A stretch of 59,535 bases of DNA, counting the filler, from Dugesia japonica (lineage: Eukaryota): the NCBI GenBank assembly GCA_001938525.1. It is 5 parts of 5 records of this genome, joined end to end, with 100 filler letters (N's around TTAATTAATTAA, not from the genome) between each part and the next. Parts side by side here need not be neighbours in the genome. Positions count along the whole stretch, not along the records: positions 48,041 to 59,535 come from MQRL01602944.1; 4 more parts are not named here. One strand, given 5' to 3'. The notes below the pieces were generated by a model, which was given only the letters and a program-made list of their open reading frames with translations, searched no databases and was not told the origin of the DNA. The position numbers and the translations under genes were made by a program. Positions 48,041 through 59,535 of the stretch are shown here, one piece after another (within the stretch, counting starts at the first letter, position 1; each line of letters opens with the position of its first letter).

Positions 48041-50064
48041 ATATCTATTTTCCGATCGAATACTGTGTTTTATTTATACTTTTAGTGGACGAAAATAAAT
48101 TAGTTTGAAAATGTCAAAATTTTTAATTGTCAATTTTCTTTCACTCAATATTTGGTCACTATTACTTATAAATAAAAGTATCAGCATCTTTTAAAGAAAG
48201 TTCATGACTCCATAAAATATTATAAGACAAATATATAGATAATTATATTAATAATTCAATTTTATAAAATCATCTCTATTTAAATGAAATTTTGTCTAAT
48301 TAGTGCTGCATTTACATATCTTCTCAATCAAAATTCACCGTTTAGGATAAATGCGCTTTGGCATTAAATGATTCTTTACTTTGGGTCCAGATTTTCTTTG
48401 TAAAATTTCCTCGTTAGTTTTCCCATCACAAATCTTCTTAATATTATCGTAGACTGTATCATTGGCTATTTCTTTCACGTAATTACCATTATTGTATTAT
48501 TTTTATTGTTAGTATAGCGCGTTTTTTCTTTTTGTTGTTGATGAAACAATTAAATGATCTTCGCTTGGATGTTTATCATATCAATAATAGCTGATATTAG
48601 AAAAAATAATATTTATTATAACAGAAATAATTGATGATTTTAGTGATCGTTTTTATTCATTGCGCTGTTATCTTACAAATTTTGGCTTAATTAAATTTTT
48701 TTAATTAAATAATTAATTTGGTTTTGTGTATTCCTTCGTTTTGTTCTGTTTGTCTGGGTTATGGCTATTTGATTCTTTAGTCTCATGACATGGTTTTCAT
48801 AATAGAGCCTGGACGTCATTCTGTAAAATTTCATAATTAAGATATATTCTCTTTCTCATATTAGGTAATTTTATAATGTGATGGGTTTAACAAATTAAAT
48901 TATTTTACAATATGAACTAACTATTTTTTGTTTTATATAATATTATTTTGAGCTTAAATACCCCCTCCAGATTTGCATTCTGTAAGTGTTCTTTGATTAC
49001 ATTTTACTGCTTTCTTTTTCCACATGATACAACTTTTACTTTTCTCACTATGATCATTTCTACATATTCTGTTACGTCATTCAATTTCTCTTTTTCTGAT
49101 CCATCCATTTTATACACACTCATTTACTATTATTATACTCTACTATTACATTTCGATTTAAGATTATTTACAGATTATTCTCACTGCTCGTTACCACACA
49201 CTTCTTCCGGCCCTTCTCTTAGGGGTACTGGTTCTCACCATAACCTTGGTAAAATATAAGTATTTATCCGCTAATTCCAATGATTCGTGGCTAATTTTGG
49301 GCTTCAGATATTGTATTTTCTTTGCTTTTATACGCAACATTATTATAGTTAATAACACCATTGTTGCTAATATTCCACTGACTCNTCTAATGAGTCTTGT
49401 TGACGATCCTTCATCTGTTTCCGATGTAGTCATTTCCGTAGATGCTTCTTCCAACTGTTTCAAATTCGCTGGTTTGATTTTTTGTTCGTTGGTTTTTACC
49501 ATCTTTTTCATCAACCTATCGATAATATCGTTTCCTTTCCTGATTTAGCACTCTTGTCTGAAATTCAGATTCTCAGTTGACTTTTATTTCCATTTTACAA
49601 TGACTCGTTTCAATTATCTCTCTGTTGGGGTGAAACACCTGATGTTTGAAGAAAATTGAGGCCGAGGACTGAAAACATAAACTAATAAAGAAGGGTGAAT
49701 CAAAAAGTAAGTCCATTAAGAATAAATGGAGTAGAGAATTCGCTGGGCAACAAGTAATTGAAATAACGGGTAACATATAACGAAAACGAAGAAAAATGAG
49801 TATGAAGATCCTCAATGAACAAATGTAACCCCCATCAAAGTATTAATTAGGAAAATTATTAAATTAATATTAAATTACAAGAAAACTGTTATTGGAGAAG
49901 AATTAATTATTGAAGAAATATTAATTAATTTTTTAACGAGAATATAAATTTAAATTAGTCAAAAATCGGTTTTTCCTAAATATCTCGGGATCGGATAATC
50001 ATAAAACTAAGGGACAAGAAAATTTGGAAAGAAAATGATCAGACACAATGAAATTTGGTATGAA

Positions 50065-50310
50065 GAAAATCTTACTACCATCAAGAAGGTTGCTCCAAGG
50101 ATTTGAAGTTTAGGCCAATAATGAACTTGAAAATAAAAATAAAACAAAGGAATGACAATTAGATGACATTCCAAAAATAGCTACCAATAGAAACTTCAAA
50201 AACCCATAAAAAATCTTGAAAATTCACTCCAGAACCAATATAGCACCGTAAAAATAACTACTCAATGTAGAACAAGTCGGGGTGGAAACAGAAATGGTAT
50301 ATATTGCATC
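50065..50310 (+). promoter_or_regulatory. putative Pol II promoter in left arm of element B
   Basis: CCAAT 50115, 50184, 50235; ggggtg..gaaatggTATATAT at 50298; aligns with 14030-14285. Confidence 0.5.
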
Positions 50311-50589
50311 GAAATTTAGACGAAAAACAGTCATTTTTTACAAACTTGTGTCCATACATTATTACGTATCGACCACCTTTTATTATTTTAAAGAAACGTC
50401 GCCACGAGAATACTAACTCAATCAGTCAGCAATTAAAATGTGTAAGATCATCACCTTGGAAAAATTTAATAATCGGAATATATTTTAAATTATAGAGTGA
50501 CATCGTTAGATCATAGCAAGAAGAGGATCGATAGAAATCACAAATAATTAGAACCAGGAAATGGTACTTTAAACTCCTCACCGTTGCAG

Positions 50590-50606
50590 AAATTCAAATT
50601 TACTCA
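50590..50606 (+). other. putative leader micro-exon (element B, plus strand)
   Basis: ctcaccgttgcAG|aaattcaaatttactcA|GTAAGT. Confidence 0.55.
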
Positions 50607-51132
50607 GTAAGTAAACATTCATTTCATATTGATGTGTGTTGAAGGTGGAAAATTATTATTGATAATTATTAATTTGCTTATTTAATATATTATTGATAAA
50701 TGAGTTTTNTTATTATATCATGTTTAGANTCGAATAGAATATATATTAATTTAATAATCAAATTATTATTAATTTTAAATGAAATGCTGTTGTTGGGTTT
50801 TTAGGATTTTTAAATAATTTGAATTTAATATCTGCATGCCTCGACCTCGCTTATTTTCTTAAATGCATAAGTGCGATTTATTTCGTCTAGGGGCATACCT
50901 AAAAACCACAAGCATTTGAGTCACCTCTGTGATATGCCCCTCTTCCCACGAGTTCAGCGCCACTTTGCGGTATCGCGTCTTACGTTTCCTTTTCACGAAC
51001 CCTCATCTCAATCACTCTTAATTACTCAGTATTGATTTTACATAAATCAGGTTTGATAAAATTTAACTGGTCATACATAACCGCGAATAAACACAAAAAA
51101 AATCAATCACGTTGAGAACTATTTATTCGCAT

Positions 51133-51442
51133 CTATTCACATGTATCTAAATCCACCGTGGCATTCCCTTCGCAAGGATCATCCACTGGGTTTCGATACA
51201 ACAACCACAGTGCCCTCAAATTGTTGAACACCATGGCCTTTTGATAATTTCGGCCATCAACCGGTTGGCTTGCTGCAAGGCCAACTCTTTCTCTTTTAAT
51301 TGTTGATATTTGCTACTATGCTTGGTAACCTAACTTTTCAGTTGCAGCACTTCATTTCGTAGCGCCCGACGCTCCTCTTTCCATTTCTTCTGTATGGCTA
51401 GCATTTCTTTCGATGGAGTCTTATTATCTTTTGTCAGATTCA
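51133..51442 (-). pseudogene. coiled-coil cassette (A|TG start), two in-frame stops
   Basis: tttcAG|TGAAT; (M)NLTKDNKTPSKEMLAIQKKWKEERRALRNEVLQLKS*...DLDTCE*; minus-strand AATAAA at 51127-51122. Confidence 0.55.
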
Positions 51443-51942
51443 CTGAAATAATCAAAATAGTTTATTTCAGCATTAATTATTAAACTAAGTAACAGTTGAA
51501 TTATAAATCANNNNNNNNNNNNNNNNNNNNNNNNNNNNNNNNNNNNNNNNNNNNNNNNNNNNNNNNNNNNNNNNNNAAAATAAGAGTCGATTATAATCCA
51601 CAGCATGATTCAAATAAAATTTATTTCACGACTCTTGATTCGAACAAAAAAATTGTCCGATGGTTACCCCGTCTCTTCGTCAATAATCATAACCACAGTT
51701 AACTCGTTATGTTTCAATATGCTCTAATTTGCGCATGCATTTCTCATCTTTATTCTTATTTTTATTTATTTAATTAACAAAACAAATTCTATTTATCTAA
51801 CAATTAAAATTTAAAATCATTCAAAGATTGCCTCTGCAATTATAGTGACATATATATCATTTTAATTTTCCATACTAAAATGTAAACAAAACAGAACAGC
51901 AAAACAACTCTCATCTGAAAACGCTACACATTTTATTTAGTA

Positions 51943-52356
51943 TTATTCACAGGCGATTTCGGGATGGAACCGCTCAGGCTCATCAAATCCCGAATAACCG
52001 CAACTTCCTCTTCTTCTGCTGCGACTCCAGGCTATTTTCTCATCTGCAGCACTCTCTACAGCAGCCCCAGGCAATTGGGTCTCTTCAATGACATCTTTCG
52101 CATCACTCGCCTCGAGGGTCGTCATCAGTCGATCCCATTGCGACGTGAGTAGCTTATTATTCGCCTCGAGTATGGTAACCCGCAAATTGGCTACCTCGAG
52201 ATCCGCCCTCAAATCATCGGCATCTTCTTTCCGAGCTATCTTCTCATCACGGATCATTGTCTGGACCTCCGACCCTTCAATGTAGTAACATCCGTTATTG
52301 TCGATGTATGGCCATATATAGCGTGGTCTTTTCAAATTTCTTCTGCCTTTTGCCAT
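51943..52356 (-). CDS. coiled-coil cassette protein (137 aa), unknown function
   Basis: Acceptor tactAG directly before ATG; GC-richer open frame with heptads LRADLEVANLRVTILEANNKLL; AATAAA just after stop. Confidence 0.7.
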   Translation of the reverse strand: MAKGRRNLKRPRYIWPYIDNNGCYYIEGSEVQTMIRDEKIARKEDADDLRADLEVANLRVTILEANNKLLTSQWDRLMTTLEASDAKDVIEETQLPGAAVESAADEKIAWSRSRRRGSCGYSGFDEPERFHPEIACE

Positions 52357-52424
52357 CTAGTAATTATATTCATATTTATTAATTTACTCTACATACAACA
52401 ACGATTAAAATACAATAAAATTAG

Positions 52425-52582
52425 AATTTTTTAACCTCCCATGATTTACACGATTTCTTCGGCCTACGGCCTGTCATCATTTCCCCCGTCTCATAACGCG
52501 AACTAGAGAAGATACCCGCTGGTAACAGGTATCTTTTCTCGATCCCGCTATCGTCCAACACTATTGGTCATTCCCTACTCAT
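52425..52582 (-). pseudogene. small degenerate cassette
   Basis: MSRE*PIVLDDSGIEKRYLLPAGIFSSSRYETGEMMTGRRPKKSCKSWEVKKF*; GC-richer island. Confidence 0.3.
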
Positions 52583-53116
52583 TAGTAAACCGTTGCATTA
52601 CGATTTATTTTGTACGAAAAATGGTTATTAATAATTAAAACACCTCTATTGATTATAAGAAAATAATCACATAAGATAAACAATAATAAATAAATCAATA
52701 AGAATAATGAATAATGTTTTTTATTATTTATTAAATATTCATATGACTTTGGACAAGGAAAAAAAATGATTTTCTCATTCAAAATATAATAACCCAAACA
52801 ATAATCCCATCAGGGTATAAAAAGAAATTAGCTATAATATTTGTACCCGTTGAAATCTGACAAAACCTAATTTCGCTCTACAATTCGCGGCTTCACCTGC
52901 ACTCCTCTATGCGTGAACGCCATTCGGCGAATTCCTCTGAATCCCCGTGATTTCTCAATTCATATTTTTTAAGCCACATTACGAAATTGTCTCATCCTTA
53001 AATCGTCACCTCATTTTTAATTCAAAAAGAGTCTGGGGCGGCACTCGGACATGATGATTTTATGTCATTTAACAAATTGATTTTAATATAAAATAAATAA
53101 ATGAACAAATATTTAC

Positions 53117-53152
53117 TCGGTGATAGATGTTGATAGAATGTTCTGGAGGCTT
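53117..53152 (-). other. putative leader micro-exon (element B, minus strand)
   Basis: ttttacAG|aagcctccagaac...caccgA|GTaaat upstream of minus-strand cassettes. Confidence 0.4.
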
Positions 53153-54624
53153 CTGTAAAATGGATTTGATGACTTAAAAAATTTCAACTGATTTTCCCAA
53201 AATGTTTTTAAAAATTCTTTAAAATCTTCTGCTCCTGATTTCGATGGCTTAAGAATTTTGATAATTTTTCTAAAAAGGTTTTCACGTAAAATTTTTAAAA
53301 ATTATTCTGTCTATTTTTTCCAAGTAATCTGGTTTTATCATTTTATCGACATCACGACTGGGGAGCTCTCATTACTCGCCCAATCGTCATAGACATGATT
53401 GCTAAAAGTAATCATTTCTCAACTGGGTTTAATGATCACCTATTAAAATTAATCAGCAGAATCTGTAACTTCCTCAACAAATTTCTGTTTAGCATCAGTT
53501 GACACACCACCTACGTATGATAACCCGTACCACGGTGCTCAAGACACCATTTTAATTGTACAAACACTCAAAAATCGATAGACTGAAGGATTAGTAATCG
53601 TGCTTCGCATTAGTGTGTGTTGGTGAGTCGGACACAAGTAACTGACTCAACTCGTCTAGCATTATTTAGCTCTGCATTAGTGATACACTATCTCCACACA
53701 AAATGACTCGCAATTCGATATCAATGGAAATCAATTAATCCGAGGTAATGACAAATGAAATAACTAAACCCCAACATTGAAATCCAGCAAATATGGTTTA
53801 TGTCAGGGAATTATTGAAAATCCACATACCTCCAAATAGGATCTAAATCTGAGCTCTTAACGCTCCTTTCGTTAGACTATTTTATAAATTTGTGGATTTT
53901 ATTAGGAAAATTCTTAAACAGGTCATTAAGCCAAGGGATCTAGAAAGCTAAATTGATACTAGATTATTCAAATTTTCTTTTTGTGGATTAATGATAAGCC
54001 ATTTCAAAAAATATTCTTGATGGTTTTCAATAATCAGATGCAAGCCTGTTTTCTGCCACCATCAACATCAACCGTAGGGCCTCAAGTGTGGACTATTCCT
54101 ACTAAAGTAATAATGTCTAGTTTGGTATCCTTAATTAGTGTTCCTCTTTGCAATTAACAAGGTAATATTCCATTAATTAGTATTGATTTTGTTTTTTGGT
54201 TTAAGTATTATGTAAAACAGAAAATATATTTTGCTTTTTAAAGATTCCATTTTAGTGTAAAACCTACACAGTTATTTAGTTCATAAATTATTGGCACTAC
54301 TCCTTATATAGCTCCGAATGTTACTATTATCATAATTGTTATGATATCATAACAGATTCAGGATTTAGCTTAATAATTTTTTTTTCAGTTTAAATTTTTT
54401 TTATGCATCACAACACAATTTAATCGACACTAGTCGTGTACGTTGACGTGGCATAGTAACCCAAGTTGGTATAGGGTTGCCCAAATACTTTTCGGATCCT
54501 GGATGGACAAGTTCGTTAATACAAAATATTCGGGATAATATGGTTTGATGCATAAATTAAGTTGCTTGTATAAACATGATGATTTTAATATGTCCTTAAT
54601 TGTATTAAGTGACGTTTTTAGATA

Positions 54625-54810
54625 ATGCCAGCCGATCTAATCCGTACCTTAAGATTAATCCGCAAAGAAAGAAAAACGGCCAGGTTAAAACAACTGATTG
54701 CCCATAAGTTATCGCGAGGCCGGATCGAACATCCTGACGAAACTGATTTAAGTTGTTTCGCCAAGATGTTCCCGTTATCATCGAAGGTGGACATCGATGA
54801 GGAGTTATGA
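54625..54810 (+). CDS. cassette protein 1 homologue (61 aa)
   Basis: Acceptor at 54621, AATAAA 54846; homologous to 15885-16067. Confidence 0.75.
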   Translation: MPADLIRTLRLIRKERKTARLKQLIAHKLSRGRIEHPDETDLSCFAKMFPLSSKVDIDEEL

Positions 54811-54936
54811 CCTCTTCAACAATGCAATTTGTTTTATTTGACAGAAATAAATATAAACCTTGTTACAAAAATTTTTTTTATTGATACATAGATTTGTACC
54901 ATAAATTAAATCCAAATTGAGTTTAATATTTACAGA

Positions 54937-55349
54937 ATGGATTTCGTATGGGAAACCCTTCTCGACGTCCGCACAAATAGAATCATATTTAAACTTTATC
55001 AATACCCTTATGATCGGAATGCGGGTGTGTTGCGAGACTACGCTTATATGCCATCATCGACGCTGATAACGTACGAGAGTGGGACGCATTCAAGCGGAAT
55101 GCTTATTATAAGTAGCGAGGCCCCGATCGCACAAGATAAGTGCTTCATCGCGCCACGGTCATCAACCCGTTAACAGGTGAAACCACTGGCGAGTGGAGGG
55201 ATGGCCCAGCATATGTAGTCTTGTCTGCTGCACACTTGCTGCTCAATACTACTTTGCACACCGACCTAAGCAATACGTTGTGGGACTTGCGAAATAGTGC
55301 AAGTGGTGGATCGCTGGAAAATAACGCGCCTTATTCTTCAAATGAATAG
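54937..55349 (+). pseudogene. cassette protein 2 homologue, frameshifted
   Basis: Acceptor tacAG 54935; ORFs 54937-55173 and 55140-55349; AATAAA 55379. Confidence 0.65.
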
Positions 55350-55536
55350 ACTCAGAATTTTGATTTTCACTTAATGTTAATAAATGTGTTGTAATAGTTA
55401 AATCAGTTACTGTCTCCTTGAATCCTTTTCGTATTAGTAAAAATAGTTAAATAGGAAATTTTGAATTCCTTTTCTTAATGGATTTAATTTCTTAATTTAA
55501 ATGTGTTTTAATAGACATAAAAATTTTTCTTTCCAG

Positions 55537-55839
55537 TGCATTCATCAATAAATAGACCGACAGCCCCTACCAAGAAATTAAGGGAGTATAGTAATGATGC
55601 CGAAATCACTCCATCTGCCGAAGCCAAGGTCAGACGGTATAAAAAGAAATGCCCAGCATTTAAAACAGAAGCCAAAGCATCTCATAATCAAGAAAGGGTT
55701 TGGAAATCCCGATAAGAATCTTTCACTGAGATCATCCGGTCCAGCCAAGACCGAAAAAAAACTGGTTGACGATATTTTAAAATTACGGAAGGCCATGCCA
55801 CTCGCACCACCTATGGTGGATAGAGGAGTTCAGACCTAA
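55537..55839 (+). pseudogene. cassette protein 3 homologue (A|TG start), one stop and one frameshift
   Basis: ccAG|TGCAT; (M)HSSINRPTAPTKKLRE..AEAKVRRYKKKC..NQERVWKS..LVDDILKLRKAMPLAPPMVDRGVQT. Confidence 0.75.
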
Positions 55840-55876
55840 CGGCCATGAACTTTGTTCATCGCTTTGATGATAAGTA

Positions 55877-56340
55877 AGTAGATATGAGCGCACCAAACTG
55901 TGGCCCCTTGAGGGGGTACCCCCACGATTTTTTGACACCCCTTTTTAGATTCCGCCCACTTTTTATCTTTTTCTCCGCCCATTTTTTTGGCCACTCCCCC
56001 ATTTTTTCCACGCCCACTTTTCATCTTTTTCTCCGCCCACTTTTTTGCCCGCCCACTTTTTGGTGACTCATTTTTTTCCAAAAAATTTTCTATGTCAAAA
56101 CAAAGAAATTTAGATACCCCCTACCCCCTCCGGCCATTTTGGATTTTTTGTGATGAGTCATACTTTTTTTCGAAAATTTTTCTATGTCAGAACAAAGACA
56201 TTTTACCCCTCCCCCCTCCCCTACCCTTACCCCCTCCGGCCATTTTGGATTTTTGATGACTCATACTTTTTAAGAAAATTTTTCCATGTCAGAACAAAGA
56301 CATACCCCCTCCCCCTCTCACGTAAATACATAACTTTAAA
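55877..56340 (+). mobile_element. putative Polinton-like left terminus (AGTAG...) with CCGCCCA and TGA(C/G)TCA repeats
   Basis: AGTAGATATGAGCGCACC, gggggtaccccc palindrome, about 5 cgccca repeats, three gactca..ttttctatgtc..aacaaaga units; related to 9231-10135. Confidence 0.55.
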
Positions 56341-57474
56341 AATTTTGTTTTAATAAAGAATTTTTTTTGGTTTTAATTTTTTTTATTGTTTTAATATTTT
56401 TTTTTTGGTTTTAGTATTTTTTTTTAATATTATCTTTTATTATTTTTTTTATATAAATATTAATTTTTTTTAAGGTGACATGTTTTTTTTTCTAGGTGTG
56501 TTGAAAAAAAACGTGACTTATCCATGTCTTTGTTAAAATTGCATTCTAACTGCAGGTCTTTGTTAATTTTGCATTCTTTTTTTCCCTACACACACATGAA
56601 ACATCTTAACAAAATTAAGACGAACCAATGATAATATAATATGAATGATNNNNNNNNNNNNNNNNNNNNNNNNNNNNNNNNNNNNNNNNAATTCTCATTT
56701 CATTGTTTTTTTTCGAATTAAAATAAAAATGAATCCGGATCAATTTCAATGGAGGCACGCTGTCGCGGATACCTGCAATGAGCAAGCAGTGGTAACATTA
56801 TTTTTTCTTTTTAAATGCAATTTTTTTTGTTTTTCATTAATATTTTTTATTTTTTTTTTAAATTTTTAAAATTTTTTTTTGTAAAATGTTTTTTTTTATT
56901 AAAAATATTCATTTTTAAATTTTTTGTTTAGTTTCTTTTTATTTGTCAAATTTTTTAAAATTTTGATAAAATACTCAAGAAAACAAAATATCTGGTTACA
57001 TTAAAATTTTTTTTTGAATTTATCAACTAAACTATATATATATAATCACAAACCAAAATTATTGATTTTTTTTTATTTAAATTTTTTTTTGGTAATTTTA
57101 GTTGATTTGAAATTTTTTGTTTTCGGAAAATTATTATTATTATTTTTTTGTATTTAAAAATATTATCGAGTGACACATNNNNNNNNNNNNNNNNNNNNNN
57201 NNNNNNNNNNNNNNNNNNNNNNNNNNNNCATTTCTATATTCTTTTTTTTTGCATTTCGAAATAAAATCGCGTTTAAAAATTTAATTTGATTACATAATAG
57301 TAATAGTGAGATGACTTTTTAGCGACCTGAGGGAACCCTCGGCTTCGCCTCGTCTCCCCCAGTTCACTAAAAGTCATCTCACTATTACTATCATTTATTT
57401 GGGGTTTTTTGATTCGCATTTAATTTACTATAATGAAATATAATTGCGAAATATTCTATTATTATTTAGATTTT

Positions 57475-58068
57475 AGATAAAAATGTGAAAATAAAATGTC
57501 AAAATAAAATGTGAAAATAAAATGTGAAAATAAAATGTGAAAATAAAATGTGAAAATAAAATGTGAAATAAAATGTCAAAATAAAATGTCAAAATAAAAT
57601 GTCAAAATAAAATGTCAAAATAAAATGTCAAAATAAAATGTNNNNNNNNNNNNNNNNNNNNNNNNNNNNNNNNNNNNNNNNNNNNNNNNNNNNNNNNNNN
57701 NNNNNNNNNNNNNNNNNNNNNNNNNNNNNNNNNNNNNNNNNNNNNNAAAATAAAATGTCAAAATAAAATGTCAAAATAAAATGTCAAAATAAAATGTCAA
57801 AATAAAATGTCAAATCCAAATGTCAAAATAAAATGTGAAAATAAAATGTGAAAATAAAATGTGAAATGTAAAATGTCAAATCCAAAATGTCAAAATAAAA
57901 TCCAAACCCCAGACCTCCAATGTAAATACAAAATGTAAAATGTCAAATCCAAATCCAAATCCAAATCCAAATCCAAATCCAAATCCAAAATCCAAAATCC
58001 AAATCCAAAATCCAAAATCCAAAATCCAAATCCAAAATCCAAATCCAAAATCCAAATCCCCAAATGTC
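57475..58068. repeat. (AAAATAAAATGTS)n and (AAATCC)n subterminal tandem arrays
   Basis: 13-bp units followed by 6/7-bp units. Confidence 0.9.
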
Positions 58069-58117
58069 AAGTATTTAGAGGAATTTTTATTTTTTTAGAG
58101 GGAGCATAAATCCTCAT

Positions 58118-58186
58118 AATCTCATGCTAATCTCATGCTAATCTCATGCTAATCTCGTGCTAATCTCATGCTAATCTCATGCTAAT
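58118..58186. repeat. (AATCTCATGCT)n tandem repeat
   Basis: About 6 copies of an 11-bp unit. Confidence 0.85.
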
Positions 58187-58289
58187 AAATTTCATTCTAG
58201 ATGCTAACCAAGTGCTAGTCAAGTGCTATCAAGGTGCTAGTCAAGTGACAACAAAGTGACTATCGTGATGCAAATTTTTTGTTTATAAA

Positions 58290-58885
58290 ATGGCTCTCGA
58301 TTATGAAAAAGATACATGTGAAAATGTTGAAAAAAACTTAAAGTGTGCAAGTGAGTTTGATCCAAATTTATTTTTGAAAGCTGAAAAAATTTGTTTAGTT
58401 TCTAGATACAAAGAAATTAAAATGAGAAATCCTAAAATTAAAGATTACACTGCAGCAAAAGAAATTGGTGTTTCAACTATTGCATTAAATAAATCATTAA
58501 GAGATTTAAATTTAAAACCANNNNNNNNNNNNNNNNNNNNNNNNNNNNNNNNNNNNNNNNNNNNNNNNNNTTAAAACCAGAAAGAAAAAAATATCACAGA
58601 TTAAAATATTTTTATAATGAAAAAACAGATACTTATATTAAGGATCAATATGGAAATTATTTTTATAATGTGAAAACCAAACACTTTGAACTAATCCCAC
58701 CTAAAGAGTTAAAAATGANTTTAACAGAAAAAAGAAATGAAATTAATTCTGAAATTTCTGAAAAACCAAATCCTGAAAAACCAAAATCCAGAAAAAAAAT
58801 TCGTAATTCTGAAATTGGTGGTAAAATTAATCAAGATTTTGAAAATTCTTTTGACAATGCAATTAATAATTTAGGAAATAATTAA
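58290..58885 (+). CDS. Polinton helix-turn-helix-like protein (gap-interrupted)
   Basis: EIKMRNPKIKDYTAAKEIGVSTIALNKSLRDL has an HTH pattern; probably continues through 58670-58885. Confidence 0.5.
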
Positions 58886-58901
58886 ATTTTTTATTAATAA
58901 A

Positions 58902-59535
58902 ATGGAGGGGATTAGAGAGCTTATATTAGAAGATGAAGAATTTAAAAATGATTTATTAAAAAATTATAATTTAATTTTAACTTCNNNNNNNNNNNNNNNN
59001 NNNNNNNNNNNNNNNNNNNNNNNNNNNNNNNNNNNNNNNNNNNNNNNNNNNNNNNNNNNNNNNNNNNNNNNNNNNNNNNNNNNNNNNNNNNNNNNNNNNN
59101 NNNNNNNNNNNNNNNNNNTATAAAACTGAGTTGGAAAAATATAAAGAACATGATATGGAAAAAGTAGAAAATATTATGAAAGAAGAAAAATTCAAAATTC
59201 AAAATAAAAGTTATTATACAATATATTATACAATATATTATACAATACAATATTATACAATACAAAATATTATACAATCGTTTAAAAATTATGATGAATA
59301 GATCCAAACAAATACTTTAAGAAATAGTAAAAATGCCAACAGAAATTTATACAAAAGATTTAGTAAATTTTTTAAATATTACTCAAAAATTAAATTCAAA
59401 AATTAACCACCAAAAAAATATTATTAAGATTTTATCAGTAATTATTTTAACATTAATTTTGCCAATACTTTTATATTCAGTTGAATCACTTGCATATTTT
59501 ATTGACTTGGTTATAAATTTTTTCTATAGAAAATG
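58902..59535 (+). pseudogene. Polinton hypothetical protein, gapped/degenerate
   Basis: ttaataaaATG start as in other Polinton genes; K/E-rich frame; no family recognised. Confidence 0.3.

What the first reader, a model, noticed from the sequence alone, without database searches (positions are those of the whole stretch)
49623..55876. Second diverged copy preserves cassette order and protein sequence but varies in cargo
Seen: cassettes 1-2-3 are collinear with copy A and clearly similar at protein level, while intervening DNA has diverged, which argues for real selected genes. Copy B has a different, larger minus-strand array (about 50830-53050) upstream of the plus-strand array, so each array would lie within the opposite-strand transcription unit. 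Inference: a modular family with exchangeable cassettes.
Basis: partly seen in the sequence, partly recalled or inferred. Interest (0 to 1): 0.8.

Follow-up and report, generated by a model that had tools for sequence, protein, structure and literature searches.

The report
Orphan exon-like blocks, cassette claim untestable
The "cassettes" are short GC-richer blocks separated by AT-rich spacers in a draft eukaryote-like scaffold, best read as exons of two back-to-back genes or pseudogenes with no known relatives; nothing here shows exchangeable modules, so the finding is ordinary.

Summary
Only this piece (48041-59535) is visible, so copy A cannot be compared. No second copy exists inside the piece or in any collection searched.

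What is there:
- **Plus-strand set.** Three blocks at 54625-55839, 43-47% GC.
- **Minus-strand set.** Blocks at 51136-52567, 43-49% GC.
- **Spacers.** The blocks are separated by spacers of 16-26% GC. Three of the four spacers are bounded by GT...AG and join in frame.

The two sets point away from each other across 2.06 kb. They do not overlap, so neither lies inside the other's transcription unit.

The evidence for coding is weak:
- Plus-strand ORFs (at most 87 aa) are no longer than chance (P=0.51) or than the antisense ORFs.
- The 137-aa minus ORF is marginal (P=0.07).
- Blocks 2 and 3 each need a change of frame.

No relatives were found by Pfam, PHROGs or NCBIfam on 89 ORF pieces, by three word searches, by one exhaustive HMMER search of 1.84 billion proteins, or by the locus scans.

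The gap at 51511-51576 lies in AT-rich DNA with stops in all six frames beside it. No ORF crosses it.

Best reading: an ordinary intron-bearing, lineage-restricted gene pair or its pseudogenes. Interest is low.

The parts
54625..55839 (+). Plus-strand set ('cassettes 1-2-3'), given as one part. It has three exon-like blocks, 54625-54810, 54936-55349 and 55537-55839, separated by two AT-rich spacers. Read as single exons, blocks 2 and 3 each need one change of frame (2 frame changes, 0 internal stops).
   Evidence: ORF lists. Blocks are 43-47% GC and spacers 22% GC. Spacer 1 is bounded by GT...AG and joins in frame. Spacer 2 ends in a pyrimidine tract plus CAG. No family or relative was found.
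51136..52567 (-). Minus-strand set ('minus array'), given as one part. Its blocks are 52436-52567, 51946-52356 (an intact 137-aa ORF starting with ATG) and 51136-51441. Read as one exon, the lowest block has 1 in-frame stop and 1 frame change. A short GT...AG interval would remove both.
   Evidence: GC is 43-49% in the blocks and 16-26% in the spacers. The single-sequence AF2 model of the 137-aa ORF shows one long confident helix at residues 28-83, with the rest at low confidence. No relatives were found.
51511..51576 (.). Assembly gap inside the AT-rich spacer between minus block A and the lower minus blocks.
   Evidence: stops in all six frames close to both edges, AT-rich flanks, and no significant overlap between the flanks. 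No ORF is interrupted. The join itself is unverified.
52568..54624 (.). 2.06-kb region (31% GC) between the two divergent sets. It has no ORF with a family match.
55880..56330 (.). C/T-rich repeat zone directly after plus block 3, with units of about 100 bp (77% identical) and 16-bp sub-repeats. The finding's right end sits at its start.
   Evidence: (D13, D14).

Best explanation
The piece is draft scaffold from an AT-rich eukaryote-like genome. It is not vertebrate or human, because CpG is not depleted. The 'cassettes' are the exons, and the 'diverged intervening DNA' the introns, of two neighbouring, divergently oriented genes, or unprocessed pseudogenes of such genes. Both are restricted to this lineage.

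A second copy elsewhere with the same plus-strand gene but a different neighbour would then be an ordinary dispersed duplicate whose flank differs, not a system of exchangeable modules.

Shown: block and spacer composition, GT...AG borders, in-frame joins, divergent non-overlapping geometry, and the absence of any known domain or relative.

Inferred: that the blocks are spliced, that they are or were translated, and that the genome is eukaryotic.
For: - **Composition.** There are sharp composition steps: blocks are 43-49% GC and spacers 16-26%.
- **Borders.** Three of four AT-rich spacers begin with GT, end with AG and join the flanking open frames in frame. Acceptors carry pyrimidine tracts plus CAG.
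- **Codon positions.** G and purine are enriched at codon position 1 in every block. This reaches P=0.02 for the 137-aa ORF and is weak for the others.
- **Not bacterial.** Only short ORFs, no tRNA or Rfam family, and no bacterial or phage family.
- **Not human-like.** CpG observed/expected is 1.03-1.08.
- **Structure.** The 137-aa ORF is predicted to contain a long, confident helix.
Against: - Four of the five candidate donors start GTTA, and T at +3 is unusual for spliceosomal introns.
- Many alternative in-frame GT...AG pairs exist (226 on the plus side), so the in-frame joins are weak evidence.
- Plus-strand ORF lengths are at the chance level and are matched by antisense ORFs.
- Blocks 2 and 3 each need a frame change.
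- Not one relative was found among 1.84 billion representative proteins for block 2. The three hits are unrelated tandem-repeat proteins, each repeat scoring about 26 bits.
- AF2 gives pLDDT 43 for block 2's first frame.
- No transcript data were available.
Confidence: 0.5

Rival explanations
1. The GC-richer islands are remains of an old interspersed repeat (a decayed transposable or otherwise multi-copy element), or plain non-coding DNA. The ORFs are chance open stretches in locally GC-richer sequence. Similarity between copies would then be DNA-level repeat similarity, not selection on proteins.
For: - The plus-strand ORFs are no longer than shuffles (P=0.51) or antisense ORFs.
- The frames are broken: 2 frame changes on the plus side, and 1 stop plus 1 frame change on the minus side if unspliced.
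- GC3 is about equal to GC1 in all blocks.
- No relatives were found anywhere.
Against: - No transposase, reverse transcriptase, integrase or capsid-like domain occurs in any of the 89 ORF pieces.
- There are no terminal inverted or long direct repeats around the unit.
- The composition steps coincide with GT...AG borders and in-frame joins.
Confidence: 0.3
2. The unit is part of foreign or virus-derived DNA that has settled in the host genome, such as an endogenous viral region or a symbiotic-virus-like segment. Its genes have no relatives because that group is unsampled.
For: - The blocks are far GC-richer than their surroundings and show no AT bias at third positions.
- All products are orphans.
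- The same scaffold carries, beyond three gaps, a gene-dense block of a quite different composition at 58290-59535.
Against: - No viral hallmark or phage family was found.
- No relative was found in IMG/VR.
- The AT-rich block belongs to a different compositional class from the finding's ORFs. It is linked to them only through scaffold gaps.
Confidence: 0.1
3. One reading: a modular family in which a constant three-cassette plus-strand array is combined with exchangeable minus-strand cargo arrays, each lying within the other strand's transcription unit.
For: This cannot be checked here.
Against: - The two sets do not overlap and are divergent.
- There are no flanking repeats, no recombinase, and no similarity among the blocks.
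- A different neighbour beside a duplicated gene is the usual outcome of dispersed duplication.
Confidence: 0.05

Closest known systems
Taxonomically restricted (orphan) multi-exon genes and their unprocessed pseudogene duplicates in AT-rich eukaryotic genomes
   Same: GC-richer exons lie in AT-rich introns. The spacers are short and bounded by GT...AG, with pyrimidine-rich acceptors. No detectable homologues exist. A duplicated copy keeps exon order while the introns diverge.
   Different: No transcript or orthologue evidence is available. The donors are mostly GTTA, which is unusual. Two blocks need a frame change. ORF lengths do not exceed chance.
Head-to-head (bidirectional) gene pairs
   Same: Two units start 2.27 kb apart (ATG to ATG) and run in opposite directions from a shared intergenic region.
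   Different: A shared promoter usually means a spacing under about 1 kb. Nothing here shows co-regulation.
Decayed interspersed repeats or transposable-element relics
   Same: Reported as multi-copy. The frames are broken and the composition is foreign to the surroundings.
   Different: No terminal repeats and no element-type protein domain were found.
Recombination cassette systems (integron-type arrays, silent-cassette arrays for antigenic variation)
   Different: There is no tandem array of homologous units, no recombination-site repeats and no recombinase. The sequence context is eukaryote-like.

Membership tests
Spliceosomal multi-exon gene | Spacers bounded by GT...AG, with a pyrimidine tract before the AG | tested here: met
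   Three of four AT-rich spacers are bounded in this way. However, four of the five donors start GTTA, which is atypical at +3.
Spliceosomal multi-exon gene | Exons join in one open frame | tested here: inconclusive
   In-frame joins exist at three spacers, but many alternative joins exist as well. Blocks 2 and 3 each hold two frames.
Spliceosomal multi-exon gene | Spliced transcripts | not testable with these tools
   No expression data for the unknown source organism.
Protein-coding sequence under selection | Relatives or paralogues with dN/dS below 1 | not testable with these tools
   Copy A is outside the piece. No relative was found in any search.
Transposable element / interspersed repeat | Terminal inverted or long terminal direct repeats around the unit | tested here: not met
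   Only low-complexity AT-rich pairs and tandem repeats were found.
Transposable element / interspersed repeat | Transposase, reverse transcriptase, integrase or similar domain | tested here: not met
   Pfam on 89 ORF pieces of 38 aa or more gave nothing at E<=0.01 except one chance-level HSP90 match.
Recombination cassette array | Tandem homologous cassettes with flanking recombination repeats and a recombinase | tested here: not met
   There is no similarity among blocks, no flanking repeats and no recombinase domain.
EF-hand calcium-binding proteins (calbindin-like) | Significant match to an EF-hand model, with a helix-loop-helix fold | tested here: not met
   The PDB match to calbindin has a whole-sequence E of 1.8e-4, but it is summed over three repeats. 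The best single stretch scores 14.6 bits with i-E 0.26. No Pfam EF-hand match was found. AF2 places a hairpin and then one long helix there, at low confidence.
Armadillo-repeat proteins | Significant match to an Arm repeat model | tested here: not met
   Matches to designed armadillo proteins are sums over 6-7 identical repeats. The best single stretch scores 11 bits with i-E 4.9. No Pfam Arm match was found.
Endogenous viral region | Viral hallmark genes or relatives in viral collections | tested here: not met
   IMG/VR scans were blank. PHROGs and Pfam were blank.

The most novel reading that the evidence does not exclude
A lineage-specific, multi-copy head-to-head module in which one conserved three-block gene is paired with different divergent partner genes in different copies. 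None of its products has a relative among 1.8 billion representative proteins. This would make it a new mobile or virus-derived gene module that swaps its partner gene.
Probability: 0.07. Interest if true: 0.5.

Novelty: new member of a known kind. Interest (0 to 1): 0.15.

Why it matters
If the blocks are real exons, this is one more lineage-restricted gene pair, or its pseudogene copy, in a draft genome. That is useful for annotating the genome but has no wider consequence.

It would matter only if a survey of the whole assembly showed many copies with a recurrent junction between a constant part and variable partners. Nothing in this piece points that way.

Tried and rejected
- **Ciliate genetic code (TAA/TAG read as sense).** The extended frames look like noise, so this was rejected.
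- **Bacterial, phage or plasmid origin.** There are no long ORFs. PHROGs and NCBIfam found nothing. tblastn against phages and plasmids was blank for the AT-rich ORF.
- **Word searches.** The 137-aa ORF, block 2 and the AT-rich ORF all came back blank. That tool sees only proteins of 0.55-1.75 times the query length.
- **Exhaustive HMMER search on block 2's first frame.** It returned three hits: Calx-beta x7, FlgD_ig x5, and a 4220-aa repeat protein. The three are unrelated to each other and each repeat scores about 26 bits. I rejected them as chance matches inflated by repeats.
- **Locus scans.** Viral contigs x3, metagenome contigs x2 and genome contigs x2 were all blank.
- **Exact look-ups.** Four ORFs are not on record.
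- **Calbindin EF-hand and armadillo-repeat matches in the PDB.** Both are repeat-summed and below significance per stretch. I kept them only as weak leads.
- **AF2 without an alignment.** It was informative only for the long helix of the 137-aa ORF. I ran no fold search, because a lone helix and a pLDDT-43 model give meaningless matches.
- **Joined exons.** I built and searched no joined-exon protein, and strung no frames together.
- **Gaps.** No N gap was filled.
Full report
**Scope**

Only places 48041-59535 hold sequence. I filled no gaps, built no joined-exon protein and strung no frames together.

I do not take the contig for human. It is about 30% GC and CpG is not depleted (observed/expected 1.03-1.08).

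**What the piece looks like**

- It is AT-rich: 17-44% GC in 500-nt windows.
- It carries seven N runs of 40-134 nt plus single Ns, so it is draft scaffold.
- It has only short ORFs.
- There are no tRNA genes and no Rfam family at gathering score.
- Reading TAA/TAG as sense codons (the ciliate code) does not produce sensible long frames.

**The gap (tested first, as asked)**

- Beside 51511-51576 every one of the six frames has a stop. These lie within 23 nt on the left and within 4-123 nt on the right.
- The flanks are 26-33% GC.
- The last 60 nt before the gap and the first 60 nt after it do not overlap beyond chance (P=0.11).
- So no reading frame is interrupted by the gap. Continuity of the two sides can be neither shown nor excluded.
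- The only thing that depends on the join is whether minus block A (51946-52356) belongs with the lower minus blocks (51136-51441).

**The observation**

- A plus-strand set of three blocks exists: 54625-54810, 54936-55349 and 55537-55839.
- A minus-strand set lies upstream of it: 52436-52567, 51946-52356 (an intact 137-aa ORF with ATG) and 51136-51441.
- The blocks are 43-49% GC. The spacers between them are 16-26% GC.
- blastn and tblastx of the piece against itself show no second copy and no similarity among the blocks. They find only tandem repeats further right.
- The two sets are head-to-head. The minus ATG is at 52356 and the plus ATG at 54625, with 2.06 kb of 31% GC DNA between the outermost blocks. 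They do not overlap.

**Is it more than chance?**

| Test | Result |
|---|---|
| Longest plus-strand ORF (87 aa) vs dinucleotide-preserving shuffles of the local island | at expectation, P=0.51 |
| Antisense ORFs in the same island | just as long: 85, 83, 82 aa |
| 137-aa minus ORF vs the same shuffles | marginal, P=0.07 |
| G at codon position 1 over position 2, 137-aa ORF, vs shuffle-derived ORFs of 55 codons or more | P=0.02 |
| Same statistic, five plus-strand pieces | all positive, P=0.06-0.36, none significant alone |

Third-position GC is 0.33-0.50, about equal to first-position GC.

Read as single exons, plus blocks 2 and 3 each hold two overlapping frames, which makes 2 frame changes. 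The lowest minus block holds 1 in-frame stop and 1 frame change. In a draft with single Ns these may be sequencing errors, real decay or, for the minus block, a small intron.

**Exon-intron reading**

- An enumeration of GT...AG pairs that keep frames open shows that three of the four AT-rich spacers start with GT, end with AG and join the flanking frames in frame.
- Their acceptors carry pyrimidine tracts followed by CAG.
- Together with the sharp composition steps, this is the pattern of exons and introns in an AT-rich eukaryote. It explains 'conserved blocks, diverged DNA between them' without any cassette mechanism.
- Caveat: 226 in-frame pairs exist on the plus side alone.
- Caveat: four of the five best donors begin GTTA, and T at +3 is unusual (general knowledge of splice sites).
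- Caveat: block 2's second frame ends in a stop that is not followed by a donor.

**Search for relatives and families**

- Pfam found nothing for the ten main pieces or for 89 stop-to-stop pieces of 38 aa or more from all six frames. The one exception is a single chance-level match.
- NCBIfam and PHROGs likewise found nothing.
- Word searches with the 137-aa ORF and with block 2 were blank. That tool is blind outside 0.55-1.75 times the query length, so I spent the exhaustive HMMER search on block 2's first frame.
- That search found 3 proteins at E<=0.001 among 1.84 billion. They are a Calx-beta x7 protein, a FlgD_ig x5 cell-wall hydrolase and a 4220-aa repeat protein.
- The three are unrelated to one another. 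Each matches through repeated copies of a roughly 48-residue stretch scoring about 26 bits. I read these as chance matches inflated by repeats.
- Scans of IMG/VR, JGI metagenome contigs and GTDB genome contigs found no relative.
- Exact look-ups of four ORFs found nothing on record.

**Solved structures and models**

- The 137-aa ORF matches calbindin (E 1.8e-4). The score is summed over three EF-hands, and the best single stretch is 14.6 bits with i-E 0.26.
- Block 2's second frame matches designed armadillo-repeat proteins (E about 3e-8). This is summed over 6-7 identical repeats, with the best stretch at 11 bits and i-E 4.9.
- Pfam's own EF-hand and Arm models do not match. Both matches are leads at most.
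- AF2 without an alignment gives the 137-aa ORF a low-confidence hairpin at residues 14-27, a confident long helix at 28-83 (pLDDT about 90-96) and a disordered tail.
- Block 2's first frame folds at pLDDT 43, which is uninformative.

**Conclusion**

1. The best-supported reading (about 0.5) is an ordinary pair of divergently oriented, intron-bearing, lineage-restricted genes, or their unprocessed pseudogene copies.
2. The main rival (about 0.3) is that the GC-richer islands are relics of an old repeat or plain non-coding DNA whose ORFs are chance.
3. A foreign or virus-derived origin (about 0.1) is not excluded, but it has no positive evidence.

The decisive evidence is descriptive and lies outside my reach. 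It consists of a copy map and codon-aware comparison across the full assembly, and transcript data.

While weighing I recalled from memory parts of a calbindin sequence and of a consensus armadillo repeat.

Noticed in passing
window 58290-59535: A gene-dense block of a different compositional class. Three same-strand ORFs are spaced 16 and 31 nt apart, each ATG is preceded by TAAA(A), and GC3 is only 0.10-0.12 against GC1 of 0.24-0.34. The dinucleotide signature is distinct, with CpG 0.68 and TpA 0.64. No relatives were found. There is one weak PHROG match (phrog_3093, E 8e-4). The block is linked to the finding only through scaffold gaps, so it is either a foreign or compact element or a mis-scaffolded contig.
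   Followed up: partly
window 58521-58570: The nine bases before this gap are repeated as the first nine bases after it, in the same reading frame.
   Followed up: no
window 57297-57391: A near-perfect 95-nt hairpin with -48.9 kcal/mol and z = -9.3. It has a sub-threshold, both-strand match to the MIR844 model (37 bits against gathering score 70). It looks like a small palindromic (MITE-like) repeat rather than a member of that family.
   Followed up: partly
window 57480-58186: A run of satellites: a 13-nt unit (about 24 copies across a gap), hexamer and heptamer AAATCC-type repeats, and an 11-nt unit x6.
   Followed up: no
window 52497-52533: A 12-bp-stem hairpin inside the uppermost minus-strand block, with z = -3.0 on the minus strand. 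Its function is unknown.
   Followed up: partly
window 49194-49544 (-): A 117-codon open stretch just left of the finding. It has a hydrophobic, membrane-span-like segment and strong purine excess at codon position 1 (0.74). It may be the last exon of a neighbouring gene. No family match was found.
   Followed up: partly
window 55880-56330: C/T-rich tandem repeats directly after plus block 3, in units of about 100 bp at 77% identity with 16-bp sub-repeats.
   Followed up: no
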